This document shows positions 3,285-63,843 of a DNA stretch of 64,000 nucleotides, in pieces. Within the stretch, counting starts at the first letter, position 1. Each line of letters begins with the position of its first letter. Made by a program: the position numbers and the translations under genes. The notes below the pieces were generated by a model. It did not search any database. It was not told the DNA's origin and saw nothing but the letters and a program-made list of their open reading frames with translations. The stretch lies in the IMG/VR virus record IMGVR_UViG_3300042868_007959, positions 1-64,000 of that record. One strand, given 5' to 3'.

Positions 3285-3479
3285 ATGGAAAATAAAATAG
3301 TTAAATGTTGTAAAGAATGTCCTTGGGATATTAGGAATAAAAATAATGACTCAATAGTAGAACATTCTAAAAAATGGAAGAAGAAACATAATTGTCATAT
3401 GTTGATAAAAGGTAGGGAATACAAACTTTGGGATGATTTCCCAAAGTTCCAGTGTATAGGGAACAAATCTATTTTTTAG
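3285..3479 (+). CDS. Small Cys-rich hypothetical protein
   Basis: CCKEC..HNC..C; start at ATG 3285 right after the previous stop. Confidence 0.6.
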   Translation: MENKIVKCCKECPWDIRNKNNDSIVEHSKKWKKKHNCHMLIKGREYKLWDDFPKFQCIGNKSIF

Positions 3480-4170
3480 TATCTACTTGATCCAATTCTT
3501 TAATTTTTTCTATTAGTTTTGCATACGTATTTTTTTCAGTTATCCCATTAGGATTTAATCCATTCTCTTTTTGGAATTTTCGTATTGCATCCATAGTAAA
3601 TTTACCGTATTTAGAATCTACCCCATCTTTTTTTGGACCAAATTTACCGATAAAATAATCCATCTTAATTAACATAGTTTGTATTTCACCTACTAGGTTG
3701 TTATAACAACCTTTTCTAATGATACTACTACCTAATACGTCAGTTTCATCTGCGGCACAATCGATTGTAGATTGTGTTTGTTTTTTTATGGTTTTACCAC
3801 CACCCTCTAATCCGTAACAAACATTTTTTAAAAACAGACACACTTGTTCTTTATCTTTAGTCAGTTTTGTTTGAAATTCTCTAAGTTCTTCTATAATATC
3901 CTCAATAAATTCGTCGAGTACCACACTCTCCTCAACCTTCGATGAAGAAGAACAAAAATCTCCCTCTTTCACTACCTCTCTTTGGGTATCACCAAAAACA
4001 TATATAACTTCTGAAGCAGATGTTTCTGCAACACACTCATTTTTATAAACTAACGTGTCACCATTTTGGGTACTTTTCGCACAAACAGGATTCCATTCCC
4101 CACCACATTTATAGTAGTCTTCTTTAAGGATTAACTTATTAAACTGATTTTCAGTTATTTTAATTTTCAT
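3469..4170 (-). CDS. Leader + Kazal-like domain + peptidoglycan-binding domain (PG_binding_1)
   Basis: C-x7-C (CGGEWNPVC), YKNEC and GDFC; C-terminal EIQTML..DSKYGKFTMDAIRKFQKENGLNPNGI. Confidence 0.7.
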   Translation of the reverse strand: MKIKITENQFNKLILKEDYYKCGGEWNPVCAKSTQNGDTLVYKNECVAETSASEVIYVFGDTQREVVKEGDFCSSSSKVEESVVLDEFIEDIIEELREFQTKLTKDKEQVCLFLKNVCYGLEGGGKTIKKQTQSTIDCAADETDVLGSSIIRKGCYNNLVGEIQTMLIKMDYFIGKFGPKKDGVDSKYGKFTMDAIRKFQKENGLNPNGITEKNTYAKLIEKIKELDQVDTKK

Positions 4171-4171: not shown

Positions 4172-4411
4172 TTAATATTTACCGTTTATATATATAAATA
4201 AGACTTCAGGTATTCTCACACACTGACTCATATTACCATTCGAATCATAACAACCAATAACCTCCAAACCCCTTACAATATTTTTAATGTCTCTAGGTGC
4301 CTTCATAGTAACATTTTCGACATATTGTTTATTGTATAATTTATTTGAATCATAAAATGATTCATTTATAATTTTTTTTAGTTGGGATTCTGATATAATA
4401 ATTTTTTTCAT
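4172..4411 (-). CDS. Small protein with leader MKKIIISESQLKKIINE
   Basis: Start moved to ATG 4411, just after the upstream stop. Confidence 0.8.
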   Translation of the reverse strand: MKKIIISESQLKKIINESFYDSNKLYNKQYVENVTMKAPRDIKNIVRGLEVIGCYDSNGNMSQCVRIPEVLFIYINGKY

Positions 4412-4412: not shown

Positions 4413-5195
4413 TTAGTATGTTGCTTTATATCCATCACAATTTTTGATACACCAATCACCTAAAGCTTTAATTCTATTTTGTTCTTCAGTAGGTATACCT
4501 GTAGAAGGCATTTTATTAACATATCCAGTTGTAAATGTTTTACTACAAAGACTACAAGATAAATCTTTTCCACTTTCTTTTTTATTACCTCTTAAACAAA
4601 ACTCAAATCCTTTATAATCAGGATCTGTAACACTAAATATATATTTTTTAACACAGTCTTTTAAATTTTCACAATCAACTGTATCTATAATTTTTATGGG
4701 ATCGATAATATAATCATCTATATCATCTTGCCAATCTTTGTCATCTTGCCAATCTTTGTTATCTTGACAATTACAATCGGTACAAAATTTTGGTTTAGGT
4801 AATGATTTAGAGAATGACAATTTTTTACACATCATTTGCCAAGTATTAAACCCGACTTTACCGTCAGCAGTTAACCCAAATTTGTTTTGAAACTCTTCTA
4901 CTGCCCCTTTAGTTTGGTTTTTAAATACTCCATCACATTTCGTCCAGTCAGAATAACACCAATCACCACTCATACCACCACCACTGTACTTAGTATTAAA
5001 TTGGTTTACGTATAATAAATGCTGAATCATTTTAACAACGTCACCGTTTGATCCGTACATTGCCAACTTTCTTTTACATATTATTTCACATAAATCATCA
5101 CCTATTTGTATGATACCAGTGTAAGCCTCATTTAGAACACTTTTAACTATCTTACTTAATTGACTTTCAGTTAATTTAATTACTCTTTTTTTCAT
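4413..5195 (-). CDS. Leader + peptidoglycan-binding domain + Cys-rich C-terminus
   Basis: GSNGDVVKMIQHLL...DGVF..QTKGAVEEFQNKFGLTADGKVGFNTW. Confidence 0.75.
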   Translation of the reverse strand: MKKRVIKLTESQLSKIVKSVLNEAYTGIIQIGDDLCEIICKRKLAMYGSNGDVVKMIQHLLYVNQFNTKYSGGGMSGDWCYSDWTKCDGVFKNQTKGAVEEFQNKFGLTADGKVGFNTWQMMCKKLSFSKSLPKPKFCTDCNCQDNKDWQDDKDWQDDIDDYIIDPIKIIDTVDCENLKDCVKKYIFSVTDPDYKGFEFCLRGNKKESGKDLSCSLCSKTFTTGYVNKMPSTGIPTEEQNRIKALGDWCIKNCDGYKATY

Positions 5196-9609: not shown

Positions 9610-9641
9610 CAAATATAGACAAATAAAATAATAAAATCAAA
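9610..9641 (-). promoter_or_regulatory. Bacteroidota primary-sigma promoter
   Basis: TTTG-N20-TATATTTG. Confidence 0.85.
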
Positions 9642-9646
9642 TTATA

Positions 9647-10468: not shown

Positions 10469-10475
10469 AATAATT

Positions 10476-11754: not shown

Positions 11755-11816
11755 ATATGTTTTTAAATAAATATCGTATAAAAACAAAAATATAAATGTA
11801 GATACGAATAGATTTA

Positions 11817-12065
11817 TTATTTTACAATTCTACTAATTAATAAATTAATCAGACTTTGTAACTCCTCAAAAGAATAGAATCTAATATTTGGATCAGTATT
11901 AAAAACATCAACATACCACTCATCATTTATTATTTCGTCATTTGATCTAGTAATGAATGTCAAACCATCTACTATGTCTAACGCATAGTAATAGGTATCA
12001 TCTTCATCATGTTCTTTCATTTCTTCTTTACTAAAACCCAATAGTTGTATTTCTCTTTCTGTCAT
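11817..12065 (-). CDS. Hypothetical protein
   Basis: ORF track. Confidence 0.7.
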   Translation of the reverse strand: MTEREIQLLGFSKEEMKEHDEDDTYYYALDIVDGLTFITRSNDEIINDEWYVDVFNTDPNIRFYSFEELQSLINLLISRIVK

Positions 12066-12104
12066 GTTTATTTTATATAAGGGTAAAAATTTTTTTTTAA
12101 TAAA

Positions 12105-13445
12105 TCAATGATATATAGGATCTCGTACACCCCATTCATTTATTAGTATTTGATTTATTTCATTAATATAATCTTCCCACACACTATATGATTCGTCTTT
12201 AGTTAATCCATAAGTGTCACTACAATAGTTAAAGAAATCCTCCCTATCGAAATGCATAATTCTACTATATACTAAATGAGTAAAAGGGACGAAGATATTT
12301 ATCCAATCCGATGGCCACATACGATGAGGTTCTATTTGTGTATCATTTACAATAAATTCTAAAACTTTATCTAAATAATTTTTTCTCCTATCATTAGATT
12401 CTTTTATTAACCTATCCCTTTTAGGAAATTTATCAAACATAATCTTACTATATTTTTCCCACACAACATCAAACTCTTCTGAAGTTGTACCATAATGTTT
12501 ATTACAGTAATCTGAAAATTCATTATAAAATACTTCATTCGGTGATAATAAGGACATAAATGAAGAATAAAAATTTATCGATGGGTATACTATCATTTGT
12601 AATTTAGGGACAATACTTGTATCACCAATTAAAGATTCTACAACCTTATCTAAAAATCTATTATTAGTTTCTACCGATTCATTAAGACTATTATCTTCCA
12701 TTTTATCCTCTAATTCTTTTTTTAATTTGGTGAATAATATTTTTATATACCTATTAAAAATTTCTAATATTAGAGATGTATCGGTTATTCCATACTGATT
12801 ACTTATGTAATTTACTTCTACATCATTTAATGGATAGTCTCCCATAAAATTTAAATGATAATCTGCCCCATTCCAATCCTCAGTATATATCTCACCATCA
12901 CCATAAAATGGATATACAATTCTCGCCACAGGTTCGTCTTTAATTGTTTTAATCTTATATTGAGTATCTTCTAACATAAAATTAACAATCTTATCTATAA
13001 CCATATTTTCTTTATCCCCTACAGATTCATTAAGACTATTTTCACTATAATCATCTGAATACCCTTCAGAGTTTTCATAATATATTGCCATACTCTTATC
13101 ATTATATTCGTATTTTTCCCAGTACCCATCACTCTCTTCATAATATATCATATTCCCCATTTCATCGTAATCTCTTAATGTCCACGGACCATTATCCCAC
13201 TCAACGTATAAAGGAAGTTTAGGTGGGTTAGTAGGGATATTAATAGATATAATTGTTGCCTCACTATTTATATTTCTATCTATTTCTAAAGAATTTTTAT
13301 CTTTATTAAAAAGTAATGAAAATACATCTAACCATTTATCGGTAGGTATTTTGAACATCCTTAAGTCCTCAATATAAGGGGGTTTCATAACACTTACTAC
13401 CTTTTGGGAGTAATTATCATCATTTATAGATTCATTAATTTTCAT
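12105..13445 (-). CDS. Four-module polyprotein with minimal leader MKINE
   Basis: LNESVGDK, LNESVETN and IKESNDRR junctions. Confidence 0.8.
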   Translation of the reverse strand: MKINESINDDNYSQKVVSVMKPPYIEDLRMFKIPTDKWLDVFSLLFNKDKNSLEIDRNINSEATIISINIPTNPPKLPLYVEWDNGPWTLRDYDEMGNMIYYEESDGYWEKYEYNDKSMAIYYENSEGYSDDYSENSLNESVGDKENMVIDKIVNFMLEDTQYKIKTIKDEPVARIVYPFYGDGEIYTEDWNGADYHLNFMGDYPLNDVEVNYISNQYGITDTSLILEIFNRYIKILFTKLKKELEDKMEDNSLNESVETNNRFLDKVVESLIGDTSIVPKLQMIVYPSINFYSSFMSLLSPNEVFYNEFSDYCNKHYGTTSEEFDVVWEKYSKIMFDKFPKRDRLIKESNDRRKNYLDKVLEFIVNDTQIEPHRMWPSDWINIFVPFTHLVYSRIMHFDREDFFNYCSDTYGLTKDESYSVWEDYINEINQILINEWGVRDPIYH

Positions 13446-14561: not shown

Positions 14562-15014
14562 TTACCACCAACTGAACCCACCGAATTTAGTGGCATTAAA
14601 ACCAAATTTTTTATTCAATATAGATACTAATTCAGATTCCCATAATTTAGTCTTATTAAAATAATTGTTTAAAGTCTCCATCATCTCTTCACTAATAACA
14701 ATCATATCAAAATTAGTGTCCATAGCATATGTAATATCAGGTCTTTCGTAACAAGGTTCTGGTAGTTCATCGGAAAGTTCTTTAGGGTAATTACCATCCC
14801 CCCTATATCCTTTCCTCACAAGTTTAAAAATATAATCATCATGATTATCAGATTCAGGTAATACAAAACCAATTGCGTAAGGATCACAACAAATCCCCAT
14901 ACCACAGTTGTATTCCGCCCAATCCATCCATGAATCAGTTAAATTAGGGTATTCAATATCTAGTACTCTCTCTATAGTACTAATCATTTTACTTTCTGTT
15001 ATAATAATTTTCAT
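14562..15014 (-). CDS. Hypothetical protein with leader MKIIITE
   Basis: ORF track. Confidence 0.8.
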   Translation of the reverse strand: MKIIITESKMISTIERVLDIEYPNLTDSWMDWAEYNCGMGICCDPYAIGFVLPESDNHDDYIFKLVRKGYRGDGNYPKELSDELPEPCYERPDITYAMDTNFDMIVISEEMMETLNNYFNKTKLWESELVSILNKKFGFNATKFGGFSWW

Positions 15015-15337
15015 TTGTTAAAAATTTCAAGGTATAAATCTATTATGTATTGTCCATACCAATTCCAAATTTTATTTGATGTATCAAAATCCAATCCGTA
15101 ATGTCTATCCATAATCGTATAAAAACATTCAGGTACCAACTCAAAAAACGGATTATACCTTGAATGGTTTAAATGTATAGATATGTTACAATCAAATAAA
15201 TACCAATGGTATCCTTTTAGTTCTGTATTGGTTATTATGTCATTTATGACATAATCATTAAATCTTTTATTATCACTTATATTTACAGATTCATTAATAA
15301 GTCTTTTGAATTGATTTTCTGTTATAATAATCTTCAT
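15011..15337 (-). CDS. Leader + single module (MKIIITENQFKRLINE|SV)
   Basis: Start moved to ATG 15337; module motifs present. Confidence 0.8.
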   Translation of the reverse strand: MKIIITENQFKRLINESVNISDNKRFNDYVINDIITNTELKGYHWYLFDCNISIHLNHSRYNPFFELVPECFYTIMDRHYGLDFDTSNKIWNWYGQYIIDLYLEIFNK

Positions 15338-15651
15338 TTTAAAAATCCCCAATCTTGTATTTCATATAATTTTTGCATATATAGTTTCCAAACAATAAGA
15401 CACTCCTGTCCAGTAAGACCATAGGTGTCCTTACAATAATGATCAAAATAAATTAACTGAGAATCTAATCCACTATATACGGTGTTGTCTAATAAACCAA
15501 ATGTATGTTTAAAAACTGATCTAAATCCTGTTCTACCTGCAGTACTTCTACCATTACCTATATAATAAGGTGGATTAAACCAAGTATTACCTATTTCGGT
15601 ATCATCCACAAGGTACTCCACAATCTTATTTAAATATATCTCTTTATCCAT
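15334..15651 (-). CDS. Single leaderless module (YLNKIVEYLVDDT...YCKDTYGL..VWKLY)
   Basis: Full module consensus. Confidence 0.8.
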   Translation of the reverse strand: MDKEIYLNKIVEYLVDDTEIGNTWFNPPYYIGNGRSTAGRTGFRSVFKHTFGLLDNTVYSGLDSQLIYFDHYCKDTYGLTGQECLIVWKLYMQKLYEIQDWGFLK

Positions 15652-15658
15652 AACAGTC

Positions 15659-15982
15659 TTAAAGTTTTTTCATGTCTACTCCACCAGCACTACCCTCAGT
15701 TTTGGAACTTCTTGCAAAACCAATTACTGAAGTTACATTTTCTTTAGATAAAGTTTTCTCCACACCATTTTTACTTTTCACAATACATCCACCGTCACTT
15801 GTTTTGGAGATATCCGCAACATTTATATCCATATAATATTTGGAGAATCTAATTATAGTAGTTCTATCATCAGTACTTACAGAAACAGTTCCGTCATTAT
15901 TTACTTTAAATGTTGCACCATATAAAACGAAATTTTCGTTAATAAGTCTTTTGAATTGATTTTCCGATATAATAATTTTCAT
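15659..15982 (-). CDS. Hypothetical protein with leader MKIIISENQFKRLINE
   Basis: Leader DNA 43/47 identical to that of 15011..15337. Confidence 0.8.
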   Translation of the reverse strand: MKIIISENQFKRLINENFVLYGATFKVNNDGTVSVSTDDRTTIIRFSKYYMDINVADISKTSDGGCIVKSKNGVEKTLSKENVTSVIGFARSSKTEGSAGGVDMKKL

Positions 15983-16005: not shown

Positions 16006-16830
16006 TCACTTAAGTAAGTTATAGTACTCTTTGAAGTGTTTTATTCTATCAGGTAAACCAATTGTACCCCCATTTACTCTTTTTGTGACTGCGGTTACTG
16101 TTGAATCGTCCGCACCTTTGTCACAGATACTCCATAACTTATTAGAATCAAAAAAGAACGCCGCAGATGCCAATGGATACTTAGTCGCAACCAAATCAGG
16201 GTTAGAAACACAATCTTCACCGATAAATTTGGTAAAATTAGTGTAATTTGACTTACCAGTTAACTGAATATACCCTCTACCTCTAAATTTAAACCCTTCT
16301 TTGGTAGTTTCGTCACCATTACCCATTCTACTTGCGTAAACACGAGCCGCAATCTTCTCAGGTTGACGTGCATATGACTCATTTAAGTTACCTGGAAAGT
16401 ATTTACCAAATATTTTCTTCAAACCGTCCGCAGAATAGTTTAAATTCTCTGAAACTGCCTTAAAACCACCTGATTCGTGACCACATTGAGCTAAAAAGTG
16501 AGCTAAACGTAAGTTATTTGTAATATTAAACTTTTTTGCAGTCTCAGGAATCTGTGCAATGACAGAATCAGGTATATGACCCTTTAATTTTTCAATATTT
16601 AATGACCCACCTGAAGGAATTACAACATCTTCTTTTATTATTACGGTTGACCCAAACATTTTTAACCATGTTCCGTCACCAACAACACCATCTGAGGTTA
16701 ATCCATTAGCCGATTGCCATTCTTTTACCGCTTTTTCTGTTCCGGGTCCGAATGATCCATCCGCAGTAAGACCTAATTTTGTTTGGAGTTTTTTTACGTC
16801 TTCTCCTTTAGACCCATTTTTTAATAACAT
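16006..16830 (-). CDS. Endolysin: PG-binding domain + glycoside hydrolase family 19
   Basis: RLAHFLAQCGHESGGF, FRGRGYIQLTGKSNY, VTKRVNGGTIGLPDR. Confidence 0.93.
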   Translation of the reverse strand: MLLKNGSKGEDVKKLQTKLGLTADGSFGPGTEKAVKEWQSANGLTSDGVVGDGTWLKMFGSTVIIKEDVVIPSGGSLNIEKLKGHIPDSVIAQIPETAKKFNITNNLRLAHFLAQCGHESGGFKAVSENLNYSADGLKKIFGKYFPGNLNESYARQPEKIAARVYASRMGNGDETTKEGFKFRGRGYIQLTGKSNYTNFTKFIGEDCVSNPDLVATKYPLASAAFFFDSNKLWSICDKGADDSTVTAVTKRVNGGTIGLPDRIKHFKEYYNLLK

Positions 16831-17443: not shown

Positions 17444-18124
17444 TTATTTATCTTTGTTAGGACTTGCACCATATTTTACCCCAAGTATTGTCCCCACTAT
17501 ACTGAAACTATTTGTTAACAGAATACCAAACATATTACTCCAAGTGGATCCAATAATCTCAGTATCCTTTCCTATTGTCATAGAATAAACATATATTCCC
17601 GTTGTGACACACCCAACACCTATAATTACATAAAGTGCAACCTTAACAATATTATTAATCAACTCAAACTGAGTTTTCTTTTGAACTATATCTAAATTGT
17701 TTTCTGCCTCATTTTTAGCATTTTCTGCAACGACTCTTGCCTGTTCAGATTGTTTCATAGCCTCAATCAGTTCGGCACTTATTTTTTCATTCTCTAGTTT
17801 CCATTCAAGAAGTTCAGAGTTTTGACTTTCAATCCGATTGTTTTGATCCTCCATACTGGTTAAAGTATTTTGGAGTTCCTCCACCATTCTTTGGTTTTCA
17901 TCGTTGAGTATAGTCAAATCTTTGTTCTGAACCTGAACCTGTTTGGTTACCTCCAAACGTTTACGTCTAGAATCTTTATCTTTATCCGTACATTTTTTTA
18001 AATAGTCTTTAAACAAATCGTTGTCCGATTCAAACAACTTAATAATGTTTCCTTCAAGTCCGATATTCTTGGACTCAAAGAGTTTAATTAAATTGTTTTC
18101 ACTATTTTTATCTAACTTTATCAT
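17444..18124 (-). CDS. Coiled-coil protein with two C-terminal TM helices
   Basis: Long heptad region then two hydrophobic segments; ATGA overlap with the receiver gene. Confidence 0.7.
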   Translation of the reverse strand: MIKLDKNSENNLIKLFESKNIGLEGNIIKLFESDNDLFKDYLKKCTDKDKDSRRKRLEVTKQVQVQNKDLTILNDENQRMVEELQNTLTSMEDQNNRIESQNSELLEWKLENEKISAELIEAMKQSEQARVVAENAKNEAENNLDIVQKKTQFELINNIVKVALYVIIGVGCVTTGIYVYSMTIGKDTEIIGSTWSNMFGILLTNSFSIVGTILGVKYGASPNKDK

Positions 18125-18558
18125 TTATATACTTTGAAAGGTAAGGTTCTATTTTTATAACCTTCATAATCTTTTCTGAACTCCTCTAAACGTGGCTCAA
18201 TGTCGTCAGATTTGATAATCCAAAACTGAGCTCCCGCTTGAACTGCCTTTGATTGTTCTTCTGGTTCGTTTGATGATGAAATAATTCCAACAACTACGTG
18301 ATTACCGTATTCAAAATTAATTTTTCTAATTAATTCTATACCATCAAAAGAACTACCAATGATGTTTAAATCAACAAACACACAATCAGGTTTATCATTA
18401 TCATCCCCACTTTTGAACCATTTTTCGAATTTTTTTGCCGCTTCGTCAGAACTATTTAACGCGTTTAAAGACAAACTTATGTCAAGTAACGAACAAGCGT
18501 CCTCAAATACTAAATGGAATAAATCCTCGTCATCCACCAATAAAATTGAATCAATCAT
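18121..18558 (-). CDS. Stand-alone response regulator receiver domain
   Basis: ILLVDDE, VFVDLNI (phospho-Asp), ISSS, IIKS; no output domain. Confidence 0.92.
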   Translation of the reverse strand: MIDSILLVDDEDLFHLVFEDACSLLDISLSLNALNSSDEAAKKFEKWFKSGDDNDKPDCVFVDLNIIGSSFDGIELIRKINFEYGNHVVVGIISSSNEPEEQSKAVQAGAQFWIIKSDDIEPRLEEFRKDYEGYKNRTLPFKVYK

Positions 18559-18570: not shown

Positions 18571-20169
18571 TTATTTTATTTTTATTTTCATTTTAGTTCC
18601 TATTTCATTTTTCTCACAAGTAATTTTAAACTTGTGTTCTTCCAAAATTGCAACGCAAATATTTAATCCCAAACCAGTACCTGATTCCTTTTGTCCTTCT
18701 TTTCTTGTATATGGTTTACATAGGTAATCAAAATCTTCTTGTGTTAACCCCCTACCATTATCTTGAATGTAAACAGTATTCTCATCAGAATATATTTTAA
18801 CAAACTTAGTGTCAGAATCATTGTACTTTAAACCATTCCTGATTAAGTTGTCAACTGCAGTACAGAATAACGCTTCGTTTACTTCTATTGTTGGTAAGTC
18901 CTCAATAATTACTTGACTACTATATGCGGTTGATGATAGGTAATCAGATAGTATCACTTTTAAATCGCATTCCGCCTTATTTAAAACAACATCTTTTTTA
19001 ACAAGATTTGTAAACTCATATACCCCTTTATACACTTTTTGTGAATGTTTAAGACCTTCCTTAATCATTCTAATTGGTGCCTCTATTTTTAAATCGGTAA
19101 TGTCTTCGGGTTTTAATCTTCTTTCTAAAGAACTTAATCCTCTTGGCATATATGTATTGATACCTGAGTGCATATCGTGTCTTAATATTTTAGCGGCATG
19201 TTCTAAATAAGTGTTCTTTTTTTCAATCTCTTTCTTTTGTTCGTGAGTAGTGGTGACATCTGTTGCAATTTTCATAACACGATAAATCTTACCATCCATA
19301 CCAATGATTGGATTATAGGTTGCTTGAAGATGTATTAAGGAACCATCCTTTTTAACTCTAGTGATTTCACCAGTAAATAATATACCATCATTTAATTTTT
19401 CCCAAAAAAGAGAATATTCCTCACTTTTTGAGTGGTCCTCATCTATAAAAATCCTATGGTGTTTCCCAACCACTTCATCCAGTGATGAATATCCCATAGT
19501 ATTTAAAAACAATTCATTAGCGAAAATTATATTCCCCTTCAAATCAAACTCAATAACAGCGTTGGATTTATTTATCGCGTTCATTCTATTACGAATTTCC
19601 ACTTCTTTTTTCTTAAGATCTGTAACATCTTGTCTAATTGATGAGAATCCCTCCAACTTACCGTGTTTGTCAAATTTTGCCTTGATGTAGGTATCGACAT
19701 AATATAGTTCACCTGATTTTCCTTTGTTGGTAACAACATCATTCCATATCTCACCTTTCATTACTTTTTCATACATTTTACCCCAATATCCATCAGGTTG
19801 TAATCCTGAGTTTACAATAACATGATCCTTACCTTTAACCTCATCTAAAGACCAACCTGAAACATCCTCAAACTTTTTATTAACGTATGTAATTTTACCG
19901 TATTTATCGGCAACAGAAACGATGGTTGCAGAATCAATAAAATCTTCACTATCTTTTATTTGTTTTAATAAACCATCTTTTAACTCTACGGTTTGGGATT
20001 TCATTAAAAAATAAAATAATGGAGAAAATAATAAAAAGCAAGATATCTCAATAATTTTTGTTATATCAGTGGATCCAATAATCCCCGATAAAACAAAAAT
20101 TTTAGTTAAAAGAAAAGTAACCATCAAGATTACAGAAGGTATTATTAATAATTTACGTTTTTTAATCAT
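18571..20169 (-). CDS. Membrane PAS-PAS sensor histidine kinase
   Basis: Two N-terminal TMs, two PAS/PAC domains, H-box LRHD, N-box NLIRNGLKY, DNGRG, GTGLGL. Confidence 0.93.
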   Translation of the reverse strand: MIKKRKLLIIPSVILMVTFLLTKIFVLSGIIGSTDITKIIEISCFLLFSPLFYFLMKSQTVELKDGLLKQIKDSEDFIDSATIVSVADKYGKITYVNKKFEDVSGWSLDEVKGKDHVIVNSGLQPDGYWGKMYEKVMKGEIWNDVVTNKGKSGELYYVDTYIKAKFDKHGKLEGFSSIRQDVTDLKKKEVEIRNRMNAINKSNAVIEFDLKGNIIFANELFLNTMGYSSLDEVVGKHHRIFIDEDHSKSEEYSLFWEKLNDGILFTGEITRVKKDGSLIHLQATYNPIIGMDGKIYRVMKIATDVTTTHEQKKEIEKKNTYLEHAAKILRHDMHSGINTYMPRGLSSLERRLKPEDITDLKIEAPIRMIKEGLKHSQKVYKGVYEFTNLVKKDVVLNKAECDLKVILSDYLSSTAYSSQVIIEDLPTIEVNEALFCTAVDNLIRNGLKYNDSDTKFVKIYSDENTVYIQDNGRGLTQEDFDYLCKPYTRKEGQKESGTGLGLNICVAILEEHKFKITCEKNEIGTKMKIKIK

Positions 20170-21013: not shown

Positions 21014-21397
21014 ATGAAAAGAACCATTAAAAGAATATTAAAGGAAGAACTAACCGAAACAGAATATATGGGCGGAATTATTCCCTCACATTTTTTAGAG
21101 GAACTGGGAATTAAATTATTTAAAGAAGAAGATGTTGCCAGTCTTACAGAAATACAATTCGATACAAAACGTGTTGTAATAGATCTTTTTACTCTTGACG
21201 GAGACGAAGGATATGGTAGTTATGAAGATGCGATGAGTATACCTGATGGTTTTCAATACCAATACGGTTTTAACATTAATGATTTACCTGTAAGTTTTAT
21301 AAAGTACTTAATAAAAGAACTGAATGATAACTATGGTACCAATTATTTGTACCCATTTTTAGATATAATACCAAAAGGTATGTTTAAGAACCTTTAA
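21014..21397 (+). CDS. Hypothetical protein with leader MKRTIKRILKE
   Basis: Plus-strand leader gene with TATTTAT at 21002-21008. Confidence 0.8.
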   Translation: MKRTIKRILKEELTETEYMGGIIPSHFLEELGIKLFKEEDVASLTEIQFDTKRVVIDLFTLDGDEGYGSYEDAMSIPDGFQYQYGFNINDLPVSFIKYLIKELNDNYGTNYLYPFLDIIPKGMFKNL

Positions 21398-23636
21398 TAT
21401 AAGAATCAAATTTATCTATAATGATATTTTTATATGTATCCCATACATATTTAATATCGTCATCAGTCAAACCATACATATCTTTAGTATAATTAGAAAA
21501 AGAAGCGGGATAATTAATACGAAAAAGTAAATTATAACTTAAAGAAGATAGACGGTAAAAAGGTGCGAAGAATATATCGTCATTAATCGAAACTTTAGTA
21601 TCAGCCACAAGAAATTCCACAATTTTATTTAGATATTCATCTTTTCTATCTACAGATTCATTAATTCTATCACCATTCTTTTTTAATAACATTTCTTCAT
21701 ATATAATAGTAGATAATTTTTGTATGTATCTATCATATAACTCTTGTACAGTATCTATATCACATATACTATAAGTGTTACAAATATAATCTATATCTTC
21801 TCCTTCATCTAAATTAAAACCACTACCATTTGACCAATCATAAATATCATATATACTATAATCATATGCATCCTCATCCACATCCTCATCAGGATTAGTA
21901 AAAGGGTACCATATTTCTACTTTAGTTTCTGAATGATCACTAAACCTATTAATGTAAATATTATATTCGGTATCGTCTATCATAAAATCTACAATCTTAT
22001 TTAGATAATCAGATTTTCTATCTACAGATTCATTTATATTATTACCTTTAACCCTTAACATATCATCGTATATTTTAGTGAATAATTTCTCAGTGTATTT
22101 TTTAAATATATCTTCTATGGTTTTTACACTACGTATATTGTACACATCCCACATATATTCAATCTCCACTCTATTAAGGATATATTCACTCGATTCCTTA
22201 ATAGTAGATACCTCATATATAGTATAAGGGAATCCAGAGTCTTGTGCAGAATAAGGATACCTTATATAGACAAAAATTTCTGTAGAATCGACATTATATT
22301 GGGAAATACTAAGTTCATATTCGGTATCGTCTACCATATAATCAGAAATCTTATCTATTAGATCATCCTTTCTATCCACTGATTCATTAATGGGGACTTT
22401 AAATATATTAAGGATATTTTTTTTATATTTACTCCACACCCCTTTTACTTCTGAATTAGTTAACCCATAACTATCTTTACAATAGTTAAAAAAGTTTCTT
22501 TTCAACATATCATCAGATATTTTTTTTAAGTAGACTGTAGAAAACCATATAGATGCAAACGATGGTTTAAAAATTCCAAAATCTCCTTCTCCCATAGATA
22601 TTTCCGTGTCATCTACAAGAAATCCCACAATCTTATCTAAATAATCAGATTTTCTATCCACAGATTCGTTAATGGTAGGTACACCATTAATGATAGAAAA
22701 CCCATTAATTTTAGGGGTTAAAACTTTAAGATATCTTTTCCATAATTTTCTTATTTCCTCATCATCTGTCAATCCATACGTGTCTTTACAATAGTTAAAA
22801 AAGTTTCTTACATAAGAATTACCAATAAGATATTTTAATTCTAAATGATCTGTCATAGGTATTAGACCATAGAAATGATTAAAAGTAGGTTTAGCGTGAC
22901 CAGTAGGATAAGGTGGATACCACACTTTATTCTTTTGATCCACCATAGTGTCATCCACAAGGTAATCTATAATTTTATCCATATATTCACCTTTAGAAAT
23001 TTTATCCACAGATTCATTAATATTATCCTTACCAAATACAATATCCCTCATAACATCCTTATATGTTTCCCATACATAAACAATACCCTCTTCTGAAGTA
23101 ATTCCAAACGACTCATCAATGTATTCCATAAAACCGTCTATAGGGATATATGTCTCAAAAAGAAGTCTGTGAAAAGGTGTGAAATTATTACTACCTTGTC
23201 TAAGTGATCTCTTATATGTAAAAGGAAAAAATATCATCCTATTTTCATAGTCTACTTTAGTATCATCTACAAGAAATCCCACAACCTTATCTAAATATCT
23301 TTTTTTATTATCCACAGATTCATTAATGGGTTTAAGATCATACATAATAGATTCTTTATTATATCTATCCTTAATAATGGTTTTATAGTTGTCCCATATA
23401 TATTTTGTCTCATCGTAATTTAAACCATATGTATCCCTACAAGTTATCTGAACATCTGAAGGCATACCCCACGAAAGTTTATTTTTTAAATCATCGATAA
23501 AACTAGGTAAAGGTTTACCATTCGGACCTATCGGAGAAAAAGGATATATTATAACACCCGTTTCATATCTAATTATAGTATCATCAACAAACCACTTAAG
23601 AATCTTATCTAAATATATTTTTTTATTATCTTCCAT
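21384..23636 (-). CDS. Seven-module polyprotein with six INE|SVD junctions
   Basis: Six INESVD motifs, each followed by (Y/L)(L/I/M)(D/N)K(I/V)..(F/Y)(L/M)(V/I).DT; start could be 23642. Confidence 0.9.
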   Translation of the reverse strand: MEDNKKIYLDKILKWFVDDTIIRYETGVIIYPFSPIGPNGKPLPSFIDDLKNKLSWGMPSDVQITCRDTYGLNYDETKYIWDNYKTIIKDRYNKESIMYDLKPINESVDNKKRYLDKVVGFLVDDTKVDYENRMIFFPFTYKRSLRQGSNNFTPFHRLLFETYIPIDGFMEYIDESFGITSEEGIVYVWETYKDVMRDIVFGKDNINESVDKISKGEYMDKIIDYLVDDTMVDQKNKVWYPPYPTGHAKPTFNHFYGLIPMTDHLELKYLIGNSYVRNFFNYCKDTYGLTDDEEIRKLWKRYLKVLTPKINGFSIINGVPTINESVDRKSDYLDKIVGFLVDDTEISMGEGDFGIFKPSFASIWFSTVYLKKISDDMLKRNFFNYCKDSYGLTNSEVKGVWSKYKKNILNIFKVPINESVDRKDDLIDKISDYMVDDTEYELSISQYNVDSTEIFVYIRYPYSAQDSGFPYTIYEVSTIKESSEYILNRVEIEYMWDVYNIRSVKTIEDIFKKYTEKLFTKIYDDMLRVKGNNINESVDRKSDYLNKIVDFMIDDTEYNIYINRFSDHSETKVEIWYPFTNPDEDVDEDAYDYSIYDIYDWSNGSGFNLDEGEDIDYICNTYSICDIDTVQELYDRYIQKLSTIIYEEMLLKKNGDRINESVDRKDEYLNKIVEFLVADTKVSINDDIFFAPFYRLSSLSYNLLFRINYPASFSNYTKDMYGLTDDDIKYVWDTYKNIIIDKFDSYIKGS

Positions 23637-23760
23637 ATCCATATTATAAATACCTTAATATTTGGAAACGTAAATTTTTCTGGAAAATTTTTAACCCTAT
23701 ATACCGTTCACCAGAAATGGGTGTTCATTGTCACTGAACAAACCTATGTATTGAACAATA

Positions 23761-23813: not shown

Positions 23814-24116
23814 TTACCATTTTTCTCCTTCGTCATCTTTATTTCTAAGATCTTCTAATAAATCCATAAAGATTACACTCTCATCTATATAATGTAATTG
23901 ATATCTAAATTCCTCCATTATCTTTTCTGCGGCATCATAAATTTCATTTTCATACCATCCTGGATCAATATCTTGATGAGATAATTCACTTTCTATGGAC
24001 GAAACAATATCTTCGATGGAAATTGAATTACCCATTGACATATCTTGTGATTCTTTTACGGTTTTTTTAACTATTCTAGTTAAATCGTTCTCTGTTAATC
24101 TTACTATCTTTTTCAT
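23814..24116 (-). CDS. Acidic protein with leader MKKIVRLTENDLTRIVKKTVKE
   Basis: ORF track; TATTTATA at 24135-24143. Confidence 0.8.
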   Translation of the reverse strand: MKKIVRLTENDLTRIVKKTVKESQDMSMGNSISIEDIVSSIESELSHQDIDPGWYENEIYDAAEKIMEEFRYQLHYIDESVIFMDLLEDLRNKDDEGEKW

Positions 24117-26046: not shown

Positions 26047-27120
26047 CTAAAATAATCCACTATTTTTTATATAATGATGCCACACATATTGTATTTCTTC
26101 TATATGTAACCCATACATATTTTCACAATATATAGAAAACGCCCTGAAGGAATGTACTGGAAGATGTTGTTGTTTGTTAGGAGTAAGTAGGAGTATATTA
26201 CTAAAGTATGGATATTTAATTTCTCTCTCTTCATAATCTATAATAGTATCATCTATTATATACTGTACAATTTTATCTAAGTATATTTTTTTACTGTCTA
26301 CAGATTCATTCATTGGTTTGGAATTTATCTTATGATTAAATATAACTTTATATTGATCCCATACATATACTGATTCCTCATATGTTAATCCATATGTATC
26401 ATTACAATATTCAGAGAACGCATTAAATAATGGAGATTCAATTGTTGCGTAATATAATGGTGTTGATAAACCCCATTGGGAATTAATATAAGGAAGAAAA
26501 GGATATGTTACTAACTTTTGTTCATAGTCTAGTTCTGTATCATCGATTATATACTGTGATATATTGTCTAGATATTTTTCTTTTCTCTCTACAGATTCAT
26601 TAATAGATCCTTTATCGTCAACAATAGATTTATATTTTTCCCACACATATATAATTTCTTCACCTGTCAATCCATATATATCTTTACAATATTTAAGAAA
26701 AGAATAGTAGTAAGGAGAAGGTATTATAAAGGGTGGAATAATAGGAATGGGATTATATAGATATGGTAGTTTACATAGATTCTTATTGTAATCTATCTCT
26801 GTATCATCTATTATATACTGTACAATCTTATCTAGATATATTTCTTTATTGTCTACGGATTCATTGATAGATCCAGGAAGTTTAATCTTTCTATTAATTT
26901 GAAATAAAAGATTACCATAGACATATAAACAATCATCACTGTTTAAACCATAGTCAAACTCTAATATATCCCATACCGTACTGAAGAATCCATTTGAAAG
27001 AAACTCTACATCATAGGTTCTATTAGATCCATCTAATATCTCTACTGTAGAATGAAGATAATTTATTTTAATATCCTCTAACAAATACTCCACTATCTTA
27101 TTTAAATGTGTTTTATCCAT
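26047..27120 (-). CDS. Four-module polyprotein (INE|SV, MNE|SV)
   Basis: Three junctions, each followed by YLD(K/N)I.QYIIDDT. Confidence 0.85.
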   Translation of the reverse strand: MDKTHLNKIVEYLLEDIKINYLHSTVEILDGSNRTYDVEFLSNGFFSTVWDILEFDYGLNSDDCLYVYGNLLFQINRKIKLPGSINESVDNKEIYLDKIVQYIIDDTEIDYNKNLCKLPYLYNPIPIIPPFIIPSPYYYSFLKYCKDIYGLTGEEIIYVWEKYKSIVDDKGSINESVERKEKYLDNISQYIIDDTELDYEQKLVTYPFLPYINSQWGLSTPLYYATIESPLFNAFSEYCNDTYGLTYEESVYVWDQYKVIFNHKINSKPMNESVDSKKIYLDKIVQYIIDDTIIDYEEREIKYPYFSNILLLTPNKQQHLPVHSFRAFSIYCENMYGLHIEEIQYVWHHYIKNSGLF

Positions 27121-54926: not shown

Positions 54927-55313
54927 TTATCTCTTTTTACGACCTTGACAATGTGCCCTTTGTGAAAACCCTTTTGGGTTATTACAGTCAATAGACTTTT
55001 TATATTTTTGTGACCACTTTTCTTCTAACATATCTGAAGACTTTTTTTCACCTTCTAATTTATTCATAAAGAAATCAAATACTTGATCAATATTAACCTT
55101 TGCTTCAGTTACATGATCATCTGCCCAATCATGACCATTGTTTAAAATGTCATTTACTTTATTCGGATCAAATTCTTTAATCATAATATCTAATTGTCTT
55201 CTCATTTGAGTTAGGTTACTGAAAAACATATAGTTTTCACCTTTAGATTCTTCATTTAAAGTTTCTCTTACTATTCTATAAAGATCCTTTTCTGTCAATG
55301 TTACTTTTTTCAT
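54927..55313 (-). CDS. Leader protein with a basic Cys-containing C-terminal peptide after LEE
   Basis: MKKVTLTEKDLYRIVRETLNE; MLEE|KWSQKYKKSIDCNNPKGFSQRAHCQGRKKR. Confidence 0.8.
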   Translation of the reverse strand: MKKVTLTEKDLYRIVRETLNEESKGENYMFFSNLTQMRRQLDIMIKEFDPNKVNDILNNGHDWADDHVTEAKVNIDQVFDFFMNKLEGEKKSSDMLEEKWSQKYKKSIDCNNPKGFSQRAHCQGRKKR

Positions 55314-55323: not shown

Positions 55324-56088
55324 TTATAAACCTTGTTTTATTGATGCCTCTTGAGAACTAGAAGCGGTTTGTGGTACGCAGTCACCTAAACTATCATCTG
55401 ACATTACTGTCATTAACCCACCAATAAAGTCAGTCATTATGGAGTTAGCCAAACCACCTGTTTTTTCACCGAATTTTTTTCGTATACCATCAGATATTAT
55501 TGTTAACATCTGAGCACTAATAAACCCACCACCTAAAGCTTTTAAAATTGTTTTTGCAATATTTTTTAAGAACCCTTTTTGTTGGTTGTACCTTCTATAC
55601 ATCATCTCAATCGCATCATCTATAGTAAAATTATTTGATTCTTCTTTAGTCAATAAATTGTTAGTAATTAACTCATTTTTCATATCAGTATAAACTCTTT
55701 GGAATAAGTCATATATTTGATTTTTTACTGGTTCCATTCTTTCTGCTGCTAAAGTACCAGGTTTTCTACCTTTCCTACAATCTTCCGCATTTAAATCTTC
55801 TAATCTACCAAATAATGAACCCAAAGGTTCTATTATAGTTTGTAGTTGTGTTCTATAATTACCTAAATTAGCTGATTTCATATCCTCAGCAAATTTTGCC
55901 AAAGATTTTTCTAAATTAGGTAAATTGTCTACATCTGCCGTTTGCGTCGCCTGTTTCTCACTACCGACTGTTTTATTTTTACTTACCCTAGATAGTATAA
56001 GTTTTGCCTTATCTAAAAAATTTTCAGATATTAAAGATTTATTTTTTATTAATCTTCTAAATTGTCTCTCACTAATAATAATTTTCAT
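55324..56088 (-). CDS. Hypothetical protein with leader MKIIISERQF..LISE
   Basis: ORF track. Confidence 0.8.
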   Translation of the reverse strand: MKIIISERQFRRLIKNKSLISENFLDKAKLILSRVSKNKTVGSEKQATQTADVDNLPNLEKSLAKFAEDMKSANLGNYRTQLQTIIEPLGSLFGRLEDLNAEDCRKGRKPGTLAAERMEPVKNQIYDLFQRVYTDMKNELITNNLLTKEESNNFTIDDAIEMMYRRYNQQKGFLKNIAKTILKALGGGFISAQMLTIISDGIRKKFGEKTGGLANSIMTDFIGGLMTVMSDDSLGDCVPQTASSSQEASIKQGL

Positions 56089-63076: not shown

Positions 63077-63493
63077 TTAAGTTAATTGATTTGCGGGTCC
63101 TCTAGCAGGCTCAACCGACCACGGTGAGCTATCTATTGGATTCGCAACTCCCCTATTTACATCTTTAAGAGGCCAAACAGTAGAAGATCCACCAGCAGGT
63201 GCACCTTCATCCTCCTCGTCTAATATTTCTTCATCAGTATAATCATCAATACCGATACCATATTCAGTTACGACAAGTCCGTACCCACCTTCTTTATCAT
63301 AGTACCCTAAATAGATATCATTATCATCATACACTACTGTTTCGTATGCATTACTATCAAACCTAAGTCTTTTAGGTTCACCATTAACCCATTTAAGTAT
63401 TTTCTTATACCAACTTTTAGGATCTTTGATTGTTTCACCAAATTCCCTAATTAGTATTTTTTTATATTGACTTTCTGTAATTATTATTTTCAT
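63077..63493 (-). CDS. Hypothetical protein with leader MKIIITESQYKKILIRE
   Basis: ORF track; start adjusted. Confidence 0.8.
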   Translation of the reverse strand: MKIIITESQYKKILIREFGETIKDPKSWYKKILKWVNGEPKRLRFDSNAYETVVYDDNDIYLGYYDKEGGYGLVVTEYGIGIDDYTDEEILDEEDEGAPAGGSSTVWPLKDVNRGVANPIDSSPWSVEPARGPANQLT

Positions 63494-63843
63494 CACCAAT
63501 TTCTTTCTTTATTGTTAATAACATTTAGCAATTTAACTTTTATGTTTTTATTTCCAGTCATATCCATTATTTCCCCTTTTATATCATAGAAAAAACTACC
63601 TACATCTGCACTATCAAAAATAGAATCAATATAAATTATTAAACCAATTTCATTATCAAAAGAAGTTGCAACTTCGACATTTTCTACTATATCCAATATT
63701 TCACAATCAACATCCTCATCAGCATAATCCCAATCCTCATCTTCTGTAGCGTGTTCACACTTATCCCTTAAATTATTTAATGAGATGTCCACTATTTTTT
63801 GATAAACAGTTTTAAGTTGGTTTTCAGTTATTAAAACTTTCAT
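63493..63843 (-). CDS. Hypothetical protein with leader MKVLITENQL
   Basis: ORF track. Confidence 0.8.
   Translation of the reverse strand: MKVLITENQLKTVYQKIVDISLNNLRDKCEHATEDEDWDYADEDVDCEILDIVENVEVATSFDNEIGLIIYIDSIFDSADVGSFFYDIKGEIMDMTGNKNIKVKLLNVINNKERNW

What the first reader, a model, noticed from the sequence alone, without database searches (positions are those of the whole stretch)
15291..15982. The leader itself appears to be a recently copied DNA cassette
Seen: the 47 nt encoding MKIII(T/S)ENQFKRLINE at 15291-15337 and 15936-15982 are 43/47 identical, while the sequences after the site are unrelated. Inference: new cargo can be recruited by pasting a tag in front of any ORF.
Basis: partly seen in the sequence, partly recalled or inferred. 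Interest (0 to 1): 0.6.

Follow-up and report, generated by a model that had tools for sequence, protein, structure and literature searches.

The report
Portable leader tag on phage genes
In an uncultured T4-like jumbo phage, a 16-residue N-terminal leader that looks like a capsid-targeting propeptide sits on at least 15 unrelated genes. One of the two copies flagged here was joined by recombination to a protein unit that lacks it in most related phages where it was found, so the leader DNA acts as a movable junction for swapping cargo genes.

Summary
Window 15291-15337 and 15936-15982 are 43/47 identical (44/48 with the next base). Identity stops at the ATG and after codon 16, and the bodies are unrelated. 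Among 105 leader pairs in the 254-kb genome this pair is the clear outlier (41/45 nt; median 27).

The genome is T4-like, with a gp21-type prohead protease and a gp23 capsid protein. The leader (M-K-x-x-[IL]-[TS]-E...[LIV]-x-E) starts at least 15 ORFs and ends in the T4 protease motif L/I-x-E. The capsid protein's predicted maturation site (LLNE|S) matches the leader's end (LINE|S).

The gene at 15011-15337 is a chimera. Thirteen codons match the neighbouring gene's leader. They join, at the codons for I-N-E-S, a protein unit that in relatives is the leaderless last unit of 2-5-unit polyproteins.

The three closest relatives lack this 323-bp cassette. It is bounded by 22-bp leader repeats.

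Leader DNA exchange, not whole-gene duplication, is well supported. Its direction, its age and the "any ORF" claim are not settled. The capsid-targeting function is inferred. This is a new variant of the known T4 internal-protein system.

The parts
15291..15337 (-). Leader copy 1: codons 1-16 (MKIIITENQFKRLINE) of gene 15011-15337
   Evidence: It is 43/47 identical to copy 2. Codons 8-13 (AAT CAA TTC AAA AGA CTT) are identical to the leader of gene 15659-15982 here and in relative L018.
15936..15982 (-). Leader copy 2: codons 1-16 (MKIIISENQFKRLINE) of gene 15659-15982 ('Y')
   Evidence: Orthologues P0005-P0012 all carry MKIIITENQFKRLINE. P0013-P0017 carry MKKIIRLTESDLSRIVRRVINES.
14993..15014 (-). 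Third copy of the 22-nt 5' leader (ATGAAAATTATTATAACAGAAA), at the start of gene 14562-15014
   Evidence: (3 copies, 0 expected). With 15316-15337 it forms the direct repeats that bound the 323-bp cassette.
15015..15337 (-). 323-bp leader-plus-body cassette, absent from the closest relatives L023, L018 and L020
   Evidence: In those relatives the upstream domX gene runs through an ATGA overlap straight into ATG AAG ATT AT(A/T) ATA ACA GAA AGT AAA ATG..., the start of the 150-aa gene.
15287..15298 (-). Junction ATT AAT GAA TCT (I-N-E-S), where leader and body meet
   Evidence: Homology of the body to L016 and L008 starts exactly here. The same codons form the linkers of the polyproteins.
15011..15337 (-). 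Gene of 108 aa: Y-type leader plus a divergent domX unit ('domX-last')
   Evidence: The AlphaFold2 model has pLDDT 82. The leader helix (7-16) and residues 17-20 are low-confidence and stand apart from a folded domain at 24-107.
15659..15982 (-). Gene 'Y', 107 aa: leader plus a small beta-rich body with no known family
15334..15651 (-). Leaderless single domX gene (105 aa); its stop overlaps the ATG of gene 15011-15337 (ATGA)
   Evidence: It is the orthologue of the second half of L008:5291-5920.
14562..15014 (-). Gene of 150 aa with leader MKIIITESKMISTIERV...
3469..4170 (-). Leader-bearing gene (MKIKITENQFNKLILKE|) with a PG_binding_1 domain
4172..4411 (-). Leader-bearing gene (MKKIIISESQLKKIINE|S)
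4413..5195 (-). Leader-bearing gene (MKKRVIKLTESQLSKIVKSVLNE|A) with a PG_binding_1 domain
23814..24116 (-). Leader-bearing gene of the longer type (MKKIVRLTENDLTRIVKKTVKE|S)
   Evidence: It lies in a segment that other sequence replaces in G001.
54927..55313 (-). Leader-bearing gene (MKKVTLTEKDLYRIVRE|)
55324..56088 (-). Leader-bearing gene (MKIIISERQFRRLIKNKSLISE|)
63077..63493 (-). Leader-bearing gene (MKIIITESQYKKILIRE|)
63493..63843 (-). Leader-bearing gene (MKVLITENQLKTV...), with no clear second site
12105..13445 (-). domX polyprotein (446 aa). It starts MKINES| and has linkers NSLNES|V, NSLNES|V and RLIKES|N.
21384..23642 (-). domX polyprotein (752 aa, about 8 units) with six xINES|VD(R/N)K linkers
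26047..27120 (-). domX polyprotein (357 aa, 4 units)

Best explanation
The window is the first 64 kb of an uncultured T4-like jumbo phage (a 254-kb record, about 78% complete).

What the stretch is. The 47-48 nt encode an N-terminal leader of 16-27 residues. It has a first [IL]-[TS]-E site, an amphipathic helix (x-[QD]-[FLY]-x-[KR]-[LI]-[IV]) and a second [LIV]-x-E site. The same leader starts at least 15 otherwise unrelated ORFs in this genome.

Inferred function. [quoted passage not shown] It would dock the protein in the prohead core, and the gp21-type prohead protease would cut it off after the Glu.

Shown at the DNA level. The leader is a recombination module. Gene 15011-15337 is a chimera: codons 1-13 are the leader DNA of the neighbouring gene 15659-15982. 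They are joined, in the shared codons ATT AAT GA(A) for I-N-E, to a roughly 90-residue unit. In relatives that unit is the leaderless C-terminal unit of polyproteins whose units are separated by the same xNES|V linkers.

The cassette is bounded by 22-bp direct repeats of the leader's 5' end. The closest relatives lack it at exactly that breakpoint. So leader-to-leader and leader-to-linker homologous recombination adds, removes and re-heads cargo genes.

Inferred steps: capsid targeting, cleavage, and the direction of the event.
For: T4-like head module:
- Peptidase_S77 (gp21) at G000 252169-252627, E 4e-24.
- Gp23 capsid protein, E 4e-62.
- T4 gp21 cuts after L/I-X-E. T4 capsid-targeting sequences are 10-19-residue N-terminal propeptides on otherwise diverse internal proteins (PMC9026906, PMC3012670, PMC5694885).

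Leader properties:
- 15 ORFs carry the leader.
- 13 of 15 have a second [LIVFM]-x-E site 9-14 residues after the first, against 34% of other proteins at those positions.
- The capsid protein has ..ALLNE|S.. at residue 60, just before the conserved core. T4's propeptide is 65 residues. The scaffold-like protein has NLNES.
- [LI]NES occurs 22 times where 4.7 are expected.
- In the AlphaFold2 model the leader is a separate low-confidence helix, the residues right after the predicted cut (17-20) have pLDDT below 50, and a folded domain follows.
- Three leader proteins target peptidoglycan: PG_binding_1 twice and Peptidase_M23, E 2e-33. The GH19 candidate endolysin has no leader.

DNA exchange:
- The pair is the outlier among 105 leader pairs and shares the rare codons TTC and CTT.
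- The bodies are unrelated.
- The body's homology to relatives starts at ATT AAT GAA TCT.
- The same body sits in polyproteins of 2, 3, 4 and 5 units, always joined at xNES|V.
- L023, L018 and L020 lack the 323-bp cassette, and the breakpoint lies in the leader repeat.
- Orthologues of gene Y carry another leader type.
- In relative L011, Y's leader again resembles its neighbour's leader at the DNA level.
Against: - There are no virion proteome or cleavage data, because the phage is uncultured.
- The leader shares nothing with the T4 sequence MKTYQEFIAE beyond MK and the final x-E.
- [LIV]-x-E is a low-information motif (34% background).
- The domX polyproteins carry the same xNES|V motif but have no leader. 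The motif could therefore be a conserved domain boundary rather than a protease site.
- Peptidoglycan-binding cargo is unusual for proteins packed inside a T4-type head.
- The codon test is only modestly significant on its own (P 0.03-0.04; 14 codons).
- A 40-48%-identical homologue of the body (P0003) has its own leader, so the body may have had a leader before this event.
- Whether the cassette was gained or lost is unresolved.
Confidence: 0.6

Rival explanations
1. Gene conversion between leaders that already existed. On this view the body at 15011-15337 already had its own leader, as its distant homologue P0003 does. The neighbouring Y-type leader then overwrote it through a short conversion tract. 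No new cargo was recruited; the leaders of neighbours are merely homogenised.
For: - P0003 (40-48% identical body) starts MKIIITENQ and continues with a different, longer spacer.
- The three near-identical 5' leader copies are all within 1 kb.
- In L011, Y's leader also resembles its immediate neighbour's leader (55/66 nt), while distant pairs sit at chance.
- T4-type recombination needs less than 50 bp of homology (PMC2839356).
Against: - In the relatives where this body sits at the same locus (L008, L016, L014, L024; P0021-P0024) it has no leader. It is preceded by another unit or by nothing.
- Similarity to those relatives begins exactly at the I-N-E-S codons, as a join would give. An overwritten leader would not predict this.
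Confidence: 0.2
2. Whole-gene tandem duplication followed by divergence of the bodies, with the leader kept by selection.
For: - The genes are 645 bp apart, on the same strand and of similar length (108 and 107 aa).
Against: - BLASTP aligns only residues 1-16.
- hhalign of the two body profiles gives a probability of 0.24%.
- The predicted secondary structures differ: helix-hairpin-helix against mostly strands (the second model is poor).
- Bodies diverged beyond recognition would have saturated synonymous sites, yet the leaders share 12/14 codons.
- Each body has its own orthologues in other contexts.
Confidence: 0.03
3. The identity reflects only selection on the peptide plus the strong AT-rich codon bias, with no DNA copying at all.
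For: - The expected same-codon fraction from bias alone is already 0.58.
- Most other leader pairs sit near that level (370 of 600 against 332 expected).
Against: - This pair is the outlier of 105 pairs.
- It shares the rare codons TTC and CTT.
- The probability of matching all six codons of NQFKRL by chance is about 0.009, from the codon frequencies.
- The cassette polymorphism bounded by leader repeats is direct evidence of recombination at leaders.
Confidence: 0.05
4. The leader is a real shared module but not a capsid-targeting propeptide. It could be another kind of N-terminal signal, for example for assembly into tail or baseplate, for a chaperone or export route, or for efficient translation initiation. 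The xNES|V motif would then be a domain-boundary motif and not a cleavage site.
For: - There is no similarity to the T4 capsid-targeting sequence.
- The polyproteins have the motif but no leader.
- Peptidoglycan-directed cargo would fit tail-associated or periplasm-directed proteins as well.
- The complex prediction gave no verdict, so it offers no support either way.
Against: - The capsid protein's own predicted maturation site has the same L-N-E-S motif at the expected place.
- The second [LIV]-x-E site is strongly enriched at a fixed distance.
- The leader is hydrophilic and amphipathic, not a signal peptide (sequence).
- Synonymous sites in leaders are not more conserved than in bodies, which argues against an RNA-level role.
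Confidence: 0.3

Closest known systems
Capsid targeting sequence (CTS) of the phage T4 internal proteins IPI, IPII, IPIII and Alt, removed by the prohead protease gp21
   Same: - It is a short N-terminal propeptide (T4: 10-19 residues) on otherwise unrelated small proteins.
- It ends in L/I-x-E.
- The phage encodes a gp21-family protease and a gp23-family capsid protein whose own propeptide ends in the same motif.
- Fusing the tag to foreign proteins is known to be enough for packaging in T4 (PMC9026906, PMC3012670).
   Different: - It has no sequence similarity to MKTYQEFIAE.
- It is longer and in two parts, with two candidate sites.
- At least 15 genes carry it and they are scattered over the genome, whereas T4 has a few genes in two small loci.
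- The cargo includes peptidoglycan-binding and M23 peptidase proteins.
- Packaging and cleavage have not been shown here.
Hypervariable internal-protein loci of T-even phages (Repoila et al. 1994; Comeau et al. 2007, as cited in PMC3012670 and PMC2839356)
   Same: - Many (more than 30) unrelated cargo variants share only the targeting leader.
- The loci are shuffled by recombination among related phages.
   Different: - In T-even phages the shuffling is attributed to conserved intergenic promoter and stem-loop elements.
- Here the breakpoints lie inside the coding leader (a 22-bp repeat) and in the codons of the cleavage-site motif.
PeSL mobile regulatory cassettes of T4-type phages RB49 and phi1 (PMC2839356, PMC4122927)
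   Same: - A single gene is present or absent between close relatives.
- It is bounded by short direct repeats of a conserved element, which leave one chimeric copy after excision.
   Different: - PeSLs are intergenic promoter-plus-terminator motifs of about 100 bp.
- Here the repeat is the first 22 nt of the reading frame, so the exchange also re-heads the downstream protein.
- An indel of the intergenic kind exists in this window too, at 9054-9605.
Propeptides of ejection proteins in phiKZ-like giant phages such as SPN3US and 201phi2-1 (PMC5694885)
   Same: - Paralogous head proteins there keep identical N-terminal residues containing x-E sites while their bodies diverge.
- Multiple cleavage sites occur within a propeptide.
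   Different: - Those propeptides are mostly longer than 100 residues.
- Their motif is A/S-x-E.
- The proteases are only distantly related.

Membership tests
T4-type capsid targeting sequence / internal-protein propeptide | Short N-terminal propeptide (about 10-20 residues) at the very start of the protein | tested here: met
   The leaders run from Met to the second x-E site and are 16-27 residues long.
T4-type capsid targeting sequence / internal-protein propeptide | Ends in the gp21 cleavage motif L/I-x-E | tested here: met
   13 of 15 have [LIVFM]-x-E 9-14 residues after the first [IL]-[TS]-E, against 34% in the background. Two genes (14562-15014 and 63493-63843) lack a clear second site.
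T4-type capsid targeting sequence / internal-protein propeptide | The phage encodes a gp21-family prohead protease and a T4-type head module | tested here: met
   PF03420, E 4e-24. PF07068, E 4e-62. A scaffold-like acidic protein lies between them.
T4-type capsid targeting sequence / internal-protein propeptide | The same leader sits on proteins whose mature parts are unrelated | tested here: met
   All-against-all BLASTP of the bodies found no relationships apart from a shared PG_binding_1 domain.
T4-type capsid targeting sequence / internal-protein propeptide | Sequence similarity to the T4 CTS (MKTYQEFIAE) | tested here: not met
   Only MK and the terminal x-E are shared, by direct comparison with the sequence as given in 10.1101/2021.01.19.427310.
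T4-type capsid targeting sequence / internal-protein propeptide | The protein is packaged in the head and the leader is removed during maturation | not testable with these tools
   The phage is uncultured and has no proteome. The complex prediction of protease with substrate gave no verdict.
PeSL-type mobile cassette | A gene present or absent between close relatives, bounded by direct repeats of a conserved element | tested here: met
   The 323-bp cassette lies between 22-bp repeats and is absent from L023, L018 and L020.
PeSL-type mobile cassette | The repeat is an intergenic promoter-plus-stem-loop element | tested here: not met
   The repeat is the first 22 nt of the coding sequence, and the upstream gene overlaps the start by ATGA.
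Tandem whole-gene duplicates | Homology extends through the bodies | tested here: not met
   BLASTP aligns residues 1-16 only. hhalign gives a probability of 0.24%.

The most novel reading that the evidence does not exclude
The phage runs a cargo system built on a single peptide and DNA motif. On this reading the prohead-protease site (x-N-E-S|V) serves as the end of a portable targeting leader. It also serves as the linker of polyproteins made of roughly 100-residue units of an unknown fold, with about 35 units in this window. Its codons would be the homology patch on which units and leaders recombine. Cargo could then be re-headed, concatenated or split at will and released as single units inside the head. 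Polyprotein cargo cut up by the prohead protease is not known to me (from my own knowledge, not searched here) for any T4-like phage.
Probability: 0.25. Interest if true: 0.75.

Novelty: new variant of a known kind. Interest (0 to 1): 0.55.

Why it matters
T4's targeting leader is the textbook case of a tag that loads arbitrary proteins into a capsid for delivery into the host. It is also used as an engineering tool.

This locus is a natural example in a very distant T4-like lineage from freshwater metagenomes. The closest cultured relatives infect Flavobacterium and share 40% identity in the capsid protein.

The evolutionary steps can be read from the DNA. The same body appears with the leader, without it, inside polyproteins of different unit number, or absent altogether. 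The breakpoints lie in the leader and in the cleavage-site codons. That makes testable how phages diversify their injected arsenal, and it gives a candidate tag for loading proteins into phages of Bacteroidota.

If the polyprotein reading holds, it adds a new way of packaging cargo.

Tried and rejected
- Megablast of 24 kb of the window against cultured phages found no match.
- Pfam and PHROGs scans of the two bodies and of the domX unit found nothing.
- The AlphaFold2 model of gene Y was too poor to search with (pLDDT 50).
- The good model of 15011-15337 (pLDDT 82) found no convincing fold. Foldseek against PDB and BFVD gave nothing at E <= 0.001. VIA-align gave a best Z of 5.7, below the usual noise level. 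The ESM Atlas shape search stayed below TM 0.5.
- The ESM Atlas feature search suggested lysozyme/SLT-like clusters for the domX unit (score 0.93, only 132 shared features). The fold searches did not bear this out, so I do not adopt it.
- The complex prediction of the gp21 homologue with the 15011-15337 protein gave no verdict (score 0.00). It counts neither for nor against binding.
- I looked for nucleotide-level constraint on leaders, as an RNA role would predict. Synonymous identity in leaders is no higher than in bodies between orthologues, so I rejected it.
- I tried to settle cassette gain versus loss from flank identities. The region is mosaic and the result is ambiguous. Codon 2 (AAG/AAA) slightly favours deletion in the relatives.
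- Repoila et al. 1994 could not be read. It is cited only through later papers.
- The first 50 kb of Flavobacterium phage immuto hold one leader-like N-terminus. I did not scan the rest.
- I did not use the reads tools or the large representative protein search. No alternative genetic code was needed.
Full report
**1. Context**

The window is bases 1-64000 of a 253,879-bp IMG/VR virus record. It has 29% G+C and CheckV estimates it as about 78% complete. The genome has a T4-type head module:
- a Peptidase_S77 (gp21) prohead protease at 252169-252627, E 4e-24;
- a Gp23-family major capsid protein at 248884-250641, E 4e-62;
- an acidic scaffold-like protein between them.

By capsid protein, the nearest cultured phages are Flavobacterium phage vB_FspM_immuto (40% identity), Microcystis phage Mel-JY01 and Rhodothermus phage RM378. 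Close relatives occur only as metagenome contigs.

**2. The observation**

Both stretches are the first 16 codons of minus-strand genes: 15011-15337 (108 aa) and 15659-15982 (107 aa, called Y here).
- They are 43/47 identical, or 44/48 with the next base.
- Similarity stops at the ATG and after codon 16.
- BLASTP aligns residues 1-16 only.
- A third copy of the first 22 nt starts gene 14562-15014. That makes three copies within 1 kb, where shuffles give none.

Is the identity more than peptide conservation in an AT-rich genome? I used codon usage from 235 long ORFs.
- 11 of 13 same-residue codons are identical, where 7.6 are expected (P about 0.04).
- The pair shares the rare codons TTC (0.20) and CTT (0.11). 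The other 13 leaders use TTT, TTA and so on at those positions.
- Among all 105 leader pairs in the genome this pair is the outlier: 41/45 nt against a median of 27 and a next-best of 35.
- The remaining pairs sit near the codon-bias expectation, so leaders are in general old and kept similar at the peptide level. This pair is the exception.
- Between orthologues, leaders are no more conserved at synonymous sites than bodies are, so an RNA-level constraint does not explain the identity.
- The leader pair's codon identity (12/14 = 0.86) equals that between this phage and relative L018, whose Y protein is 83% identical. The copy is therefore about as old as that split: recent, but not brand new.

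**3. What the leader is**

A motif scan of the whole genome finds the leader at the start of at least 15 ORFs. Eleven of these start in the window (one, 63840-64421, runs past its end), and the rest are 64423-64803, 111654-113909 and 197737-198021.

Its form is M-K-x-x-[IL]-[TS]-E, then x-[QD]-[FLY]-x-[KR]-[LI]-[IV], then [LIV]-x-E. A shorter type (MKIIITENQFKRLINE) and a longer type (MKKIVRLTENDLTRIVKKTVKE) differ by a 4-5-residue indel.

Evidence bearing on function:
- Thirteen of 15 have the second [LIVFM]-x-E site 9-14 residues after the first. The background at those positions is 34%.
- T4 gp21 cuts after L/I-X-E. The T4 internal proteins carry 10-19-residue N-terminal capsid targeting sequences that end in that motif and are sufficient to load foreign proteins (PMC9026906, PMC5694885, PMC3012670).
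- The capsid protein of this phage has ..ASALLNE|STSADSS.. at residue 60, about 20 residues before the conserved core. T4's capsid propeptide is 65 residues (PMC5694885). Its predicted maturation site therefore has the same L-N-E-S as the leader's L-I-N-E-S.
- [LI]NES occurs 22 times in the proteome where 4.7 are expected.
- The AlphaFold2 model of 15011-15337 (pLDDT 82) shows the leader as a separate low-confidence helix (7-16). Residues 17-20, right after the predicted cut, have pLDDT below 50, and a confident domain follows from residue 24.
- Cargo with recognisable domains is directed at peptidoglycan: PG_binding_1 in 3469-4170 and 4413-5195, and Peptidase_M23 in the 751-aa protein. The likely endolysin (GH19 plus PG_binding_1, 16006-16830) has no leader.

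Together these make a T4-like targeting-and-cleavage propeptide the best reading. No experiment supports it, the leader is not similar to T4's MKTYQEFIAE, and the motif carries little information.

**4. The two bodies and their relatives**

*Gene Y.* All 15 homologues read carry a leader.
- Those 65-83% identical have MKIIITENQFKRLINE.
- Those 63-70% identical have MKKIIRLTESDLSRIVRRVINES.
- So orthologues of one body carry different leader types.
- In relative L011 the Y orthologue's leader is again most like that of its immediate, unrelated neighbour at the DNA level: 55/66 nt, with 13/18 same codons against 9 expected. Other pairs there are at chance.

*The body of 15011-15337.* It is a divergent member of a roughly 100-residue repeat family that I call domX. 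The family pattern is ..YLDKIVxFLVDDT...YCxDTYGLTxxExxxVWxxY...

The word search is limited by query length, so I also searched with a long relative. The same body, 73-90% identical, turns up in several contexts:
- as the C-terminal unit of polyproteins with 2 units (P0002), 3 units (P0023), 4 units (P0022 and P0020 = L008:6327-7571) and 5 units (P0024). The preceding unit differs, and the join is always at xNES|V;
- as a truncated, leaderless ORF that overlaps the end of the upstream domX gene in L024;
- as a stand-alone gene with a leader plus a 30-residue spacer in a distant homologue, P0003;
- with the Y-type leader only in this phage and in a 98%-identical fragment, P0001.

At the DNA level, homology between the window and L016 or L008 starts exactly at ATT AAT GAA TCT (I-N-E-S). 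Upstream of it the window has ATG AAG ATT ATT ATA ACA GAA AAT CAA TTC AAA AGA CTT. Codons 8-13 of this are identical to the Y leader here and in L018. The Y leader itself continues ..CTT ATT AAT GA(A/G).., so leader and linker share an 8-11-nt microhomology at the join.

**5. The cassette polymorphism**

The three closest relatives are:
- L023 (IMGVR_UViG_3300042878_001709), with Y 94.8% identical in DNA, the same TCG and AAC variants and the same upstream lysozyme gene;
- L018;
- L020.

All three have [Y][domX 105 aa]-ATGA-[ATG AAG ATT AT(A/T) ATA ACA GAA AGT AAA ATG.. 150-aa gene]. They lack 15011-15337.

Relative to them the window holds an extra 323 bp bounded by the 22-bp repeats at 15316-15337 and 14993-15014. 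The junction from the body into the 150-aa gene (..CCTTGAAATTTTTAACAA ATG) is the one seen in L016 and L008.

The polymorphism could have arisen in either of two ways:
- deletion between two leaders in the relatives. This is slightly favoured, because their chimeric leader has AAG at codon 2 like 15337, whereas the window's 150-aa gene and the outgroups have AAA;
- insertion at a leader in this lineage.

Flank identities are mosaic and do not decide between them.

Whole-record comparison with G001 shows many other cassette differences. One, at 9054-9605, is bounded by intergenic AT-rich repeats with a CTATATTT motif. That is the pattern described for PeSL-mediated shuffling in T4-type phages (PMC2839356).

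**6. Verdict on the interpretation**

Whole-gene duplication is excluded as far as sequence methods allow. Leader DNA exchange by homologous recombination is well supported.

Whether a leaderless unit gained the tag, or an older leader was overwritten by the neighbour's, is not fully settled. The leaderless state at the same locus in most relatives favours the first.

'Any ORF' is too broad, because the join relied on the shared I-N-E-S codons. The closest known system is the set of T-even internal-protein loci, with their conserved targeting sequence and more than 30 cargo variants (PMC3012670, PMC2839356). The difference here is that the breakpoints lie in the coding leader and the cleavage-site codons, and that the same motif also links polyprotein units.

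**7. What remains open**

- Are the leader proteins really packaged and cut?
- Are the leaderless domX polyproteins (about 35 units between 7.8 and 27.1 kb) also head proteins that the protease cuts at xNES|V? Or is the motif only a domain boundary?
- What does the domX fold do? It has no match in Pfam, PHROGs, PDB, BFVD or the ESM Atlas.

The complex prediction gave no verdict and is not used as evidence. I did not use the reads tools, and no alternative genetic code was needed.

Noticed in passing
window 7857-13445, 15011-15651 and 21384-27120 (minus strand): A large expansion of a roughly 100-residue repeat ('domX': ..YLDKIVxFLVDDT...YCxDTYGLTxxE..VWxxY..), with about 35 units. Most are strung into polyproteins of 2-8 units separated by xINES|VD(R/N)K linkers. 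It has no Pfam, PHROGs, PDB, BFVD or ESM Atlas match. Relatives differ in unit number (2-5) for the same gene.
   Followed up: partly
G000 248884-250641 and 250674-251981 (outside the window): The capsid protein has a predicted maturation site ..ALLNE|S.. at residue 60, and the scaffold-like protein has NLNES near its C-terminus. Both show the same motif as the leader end and the polyprotein linkers.
   Followed up: partly
window 3469-4170 and 4413-5195; G000 111654-113909: Three leader-bearing proteins are directed at peptidoglycan (PG_binding_1 twice; a 751-aa protein with a C-terminal Peptidase_M23 domain). The GH19 plus PG_binding_1 candidate endolysin at 16006-16830 has no leader.
   Followed up: partly
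window 9054-9605: A whole gene (183 aa) is present here and absent from the 93-97%-identical record G001. It is bounded by intergenic AT-rich direct repeats (TTTTATT(A)TTTT), each followed by a CTATATTT promoter-like motif. This is a cassette indel of the intergenic (PeSL-like) kind.
   Followed up: partly
window 23674-24070 (includes leader gene 23814-24116) and 27913-32884: In G001 these segments are replaced by unrelated sequence of about 2.1 kb and 5 kb, so one longer-type leader gene lies in a replaced region.
   Followed up: no
window 18121-18558 and 18571-20169: By eye, a response-regulator receiver protein lies next to a PAS-containing histidine kinase (motifs such as NLIRNGLKYND and GTGLGL). 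That would be a two-component pair encoded by a phage. I did not scan either against family libraries.
   Followed up: no
L024:3935-5273: In this relative the domX gene is followed by a truncated, leaderless copy of the 15011-15337 body in another frame. Next comes a 250-aa fusion of a domX unit with the 150-aa gene's body. These look like further rearrangements at the same spot.
   Followed up: partly
L022:25470-25865 (Flavobacterium phage vB_FspM_immuto_3-5A, immuto35A_42): A hypothetical protein starts MKKQILSEQFKRMQFLAGIITES, which resembles the leader. The motif may therefore extend to a cultured phage in which packaging could be tested. Only the first 50 kb of that genome were scanned.
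   Followed up: no
G000 218100-219600 (outside the window): Many overlapping 64-75% self-similar matches to G001 indicate a long internally repetitive gene.
   Followed up: no
L011:400-9000: A relative's contig carries about ten leader-bearing small genes within 9 kb, most with the longer leader type. This is a dense 'leader gene' island.
   Followed up: partly
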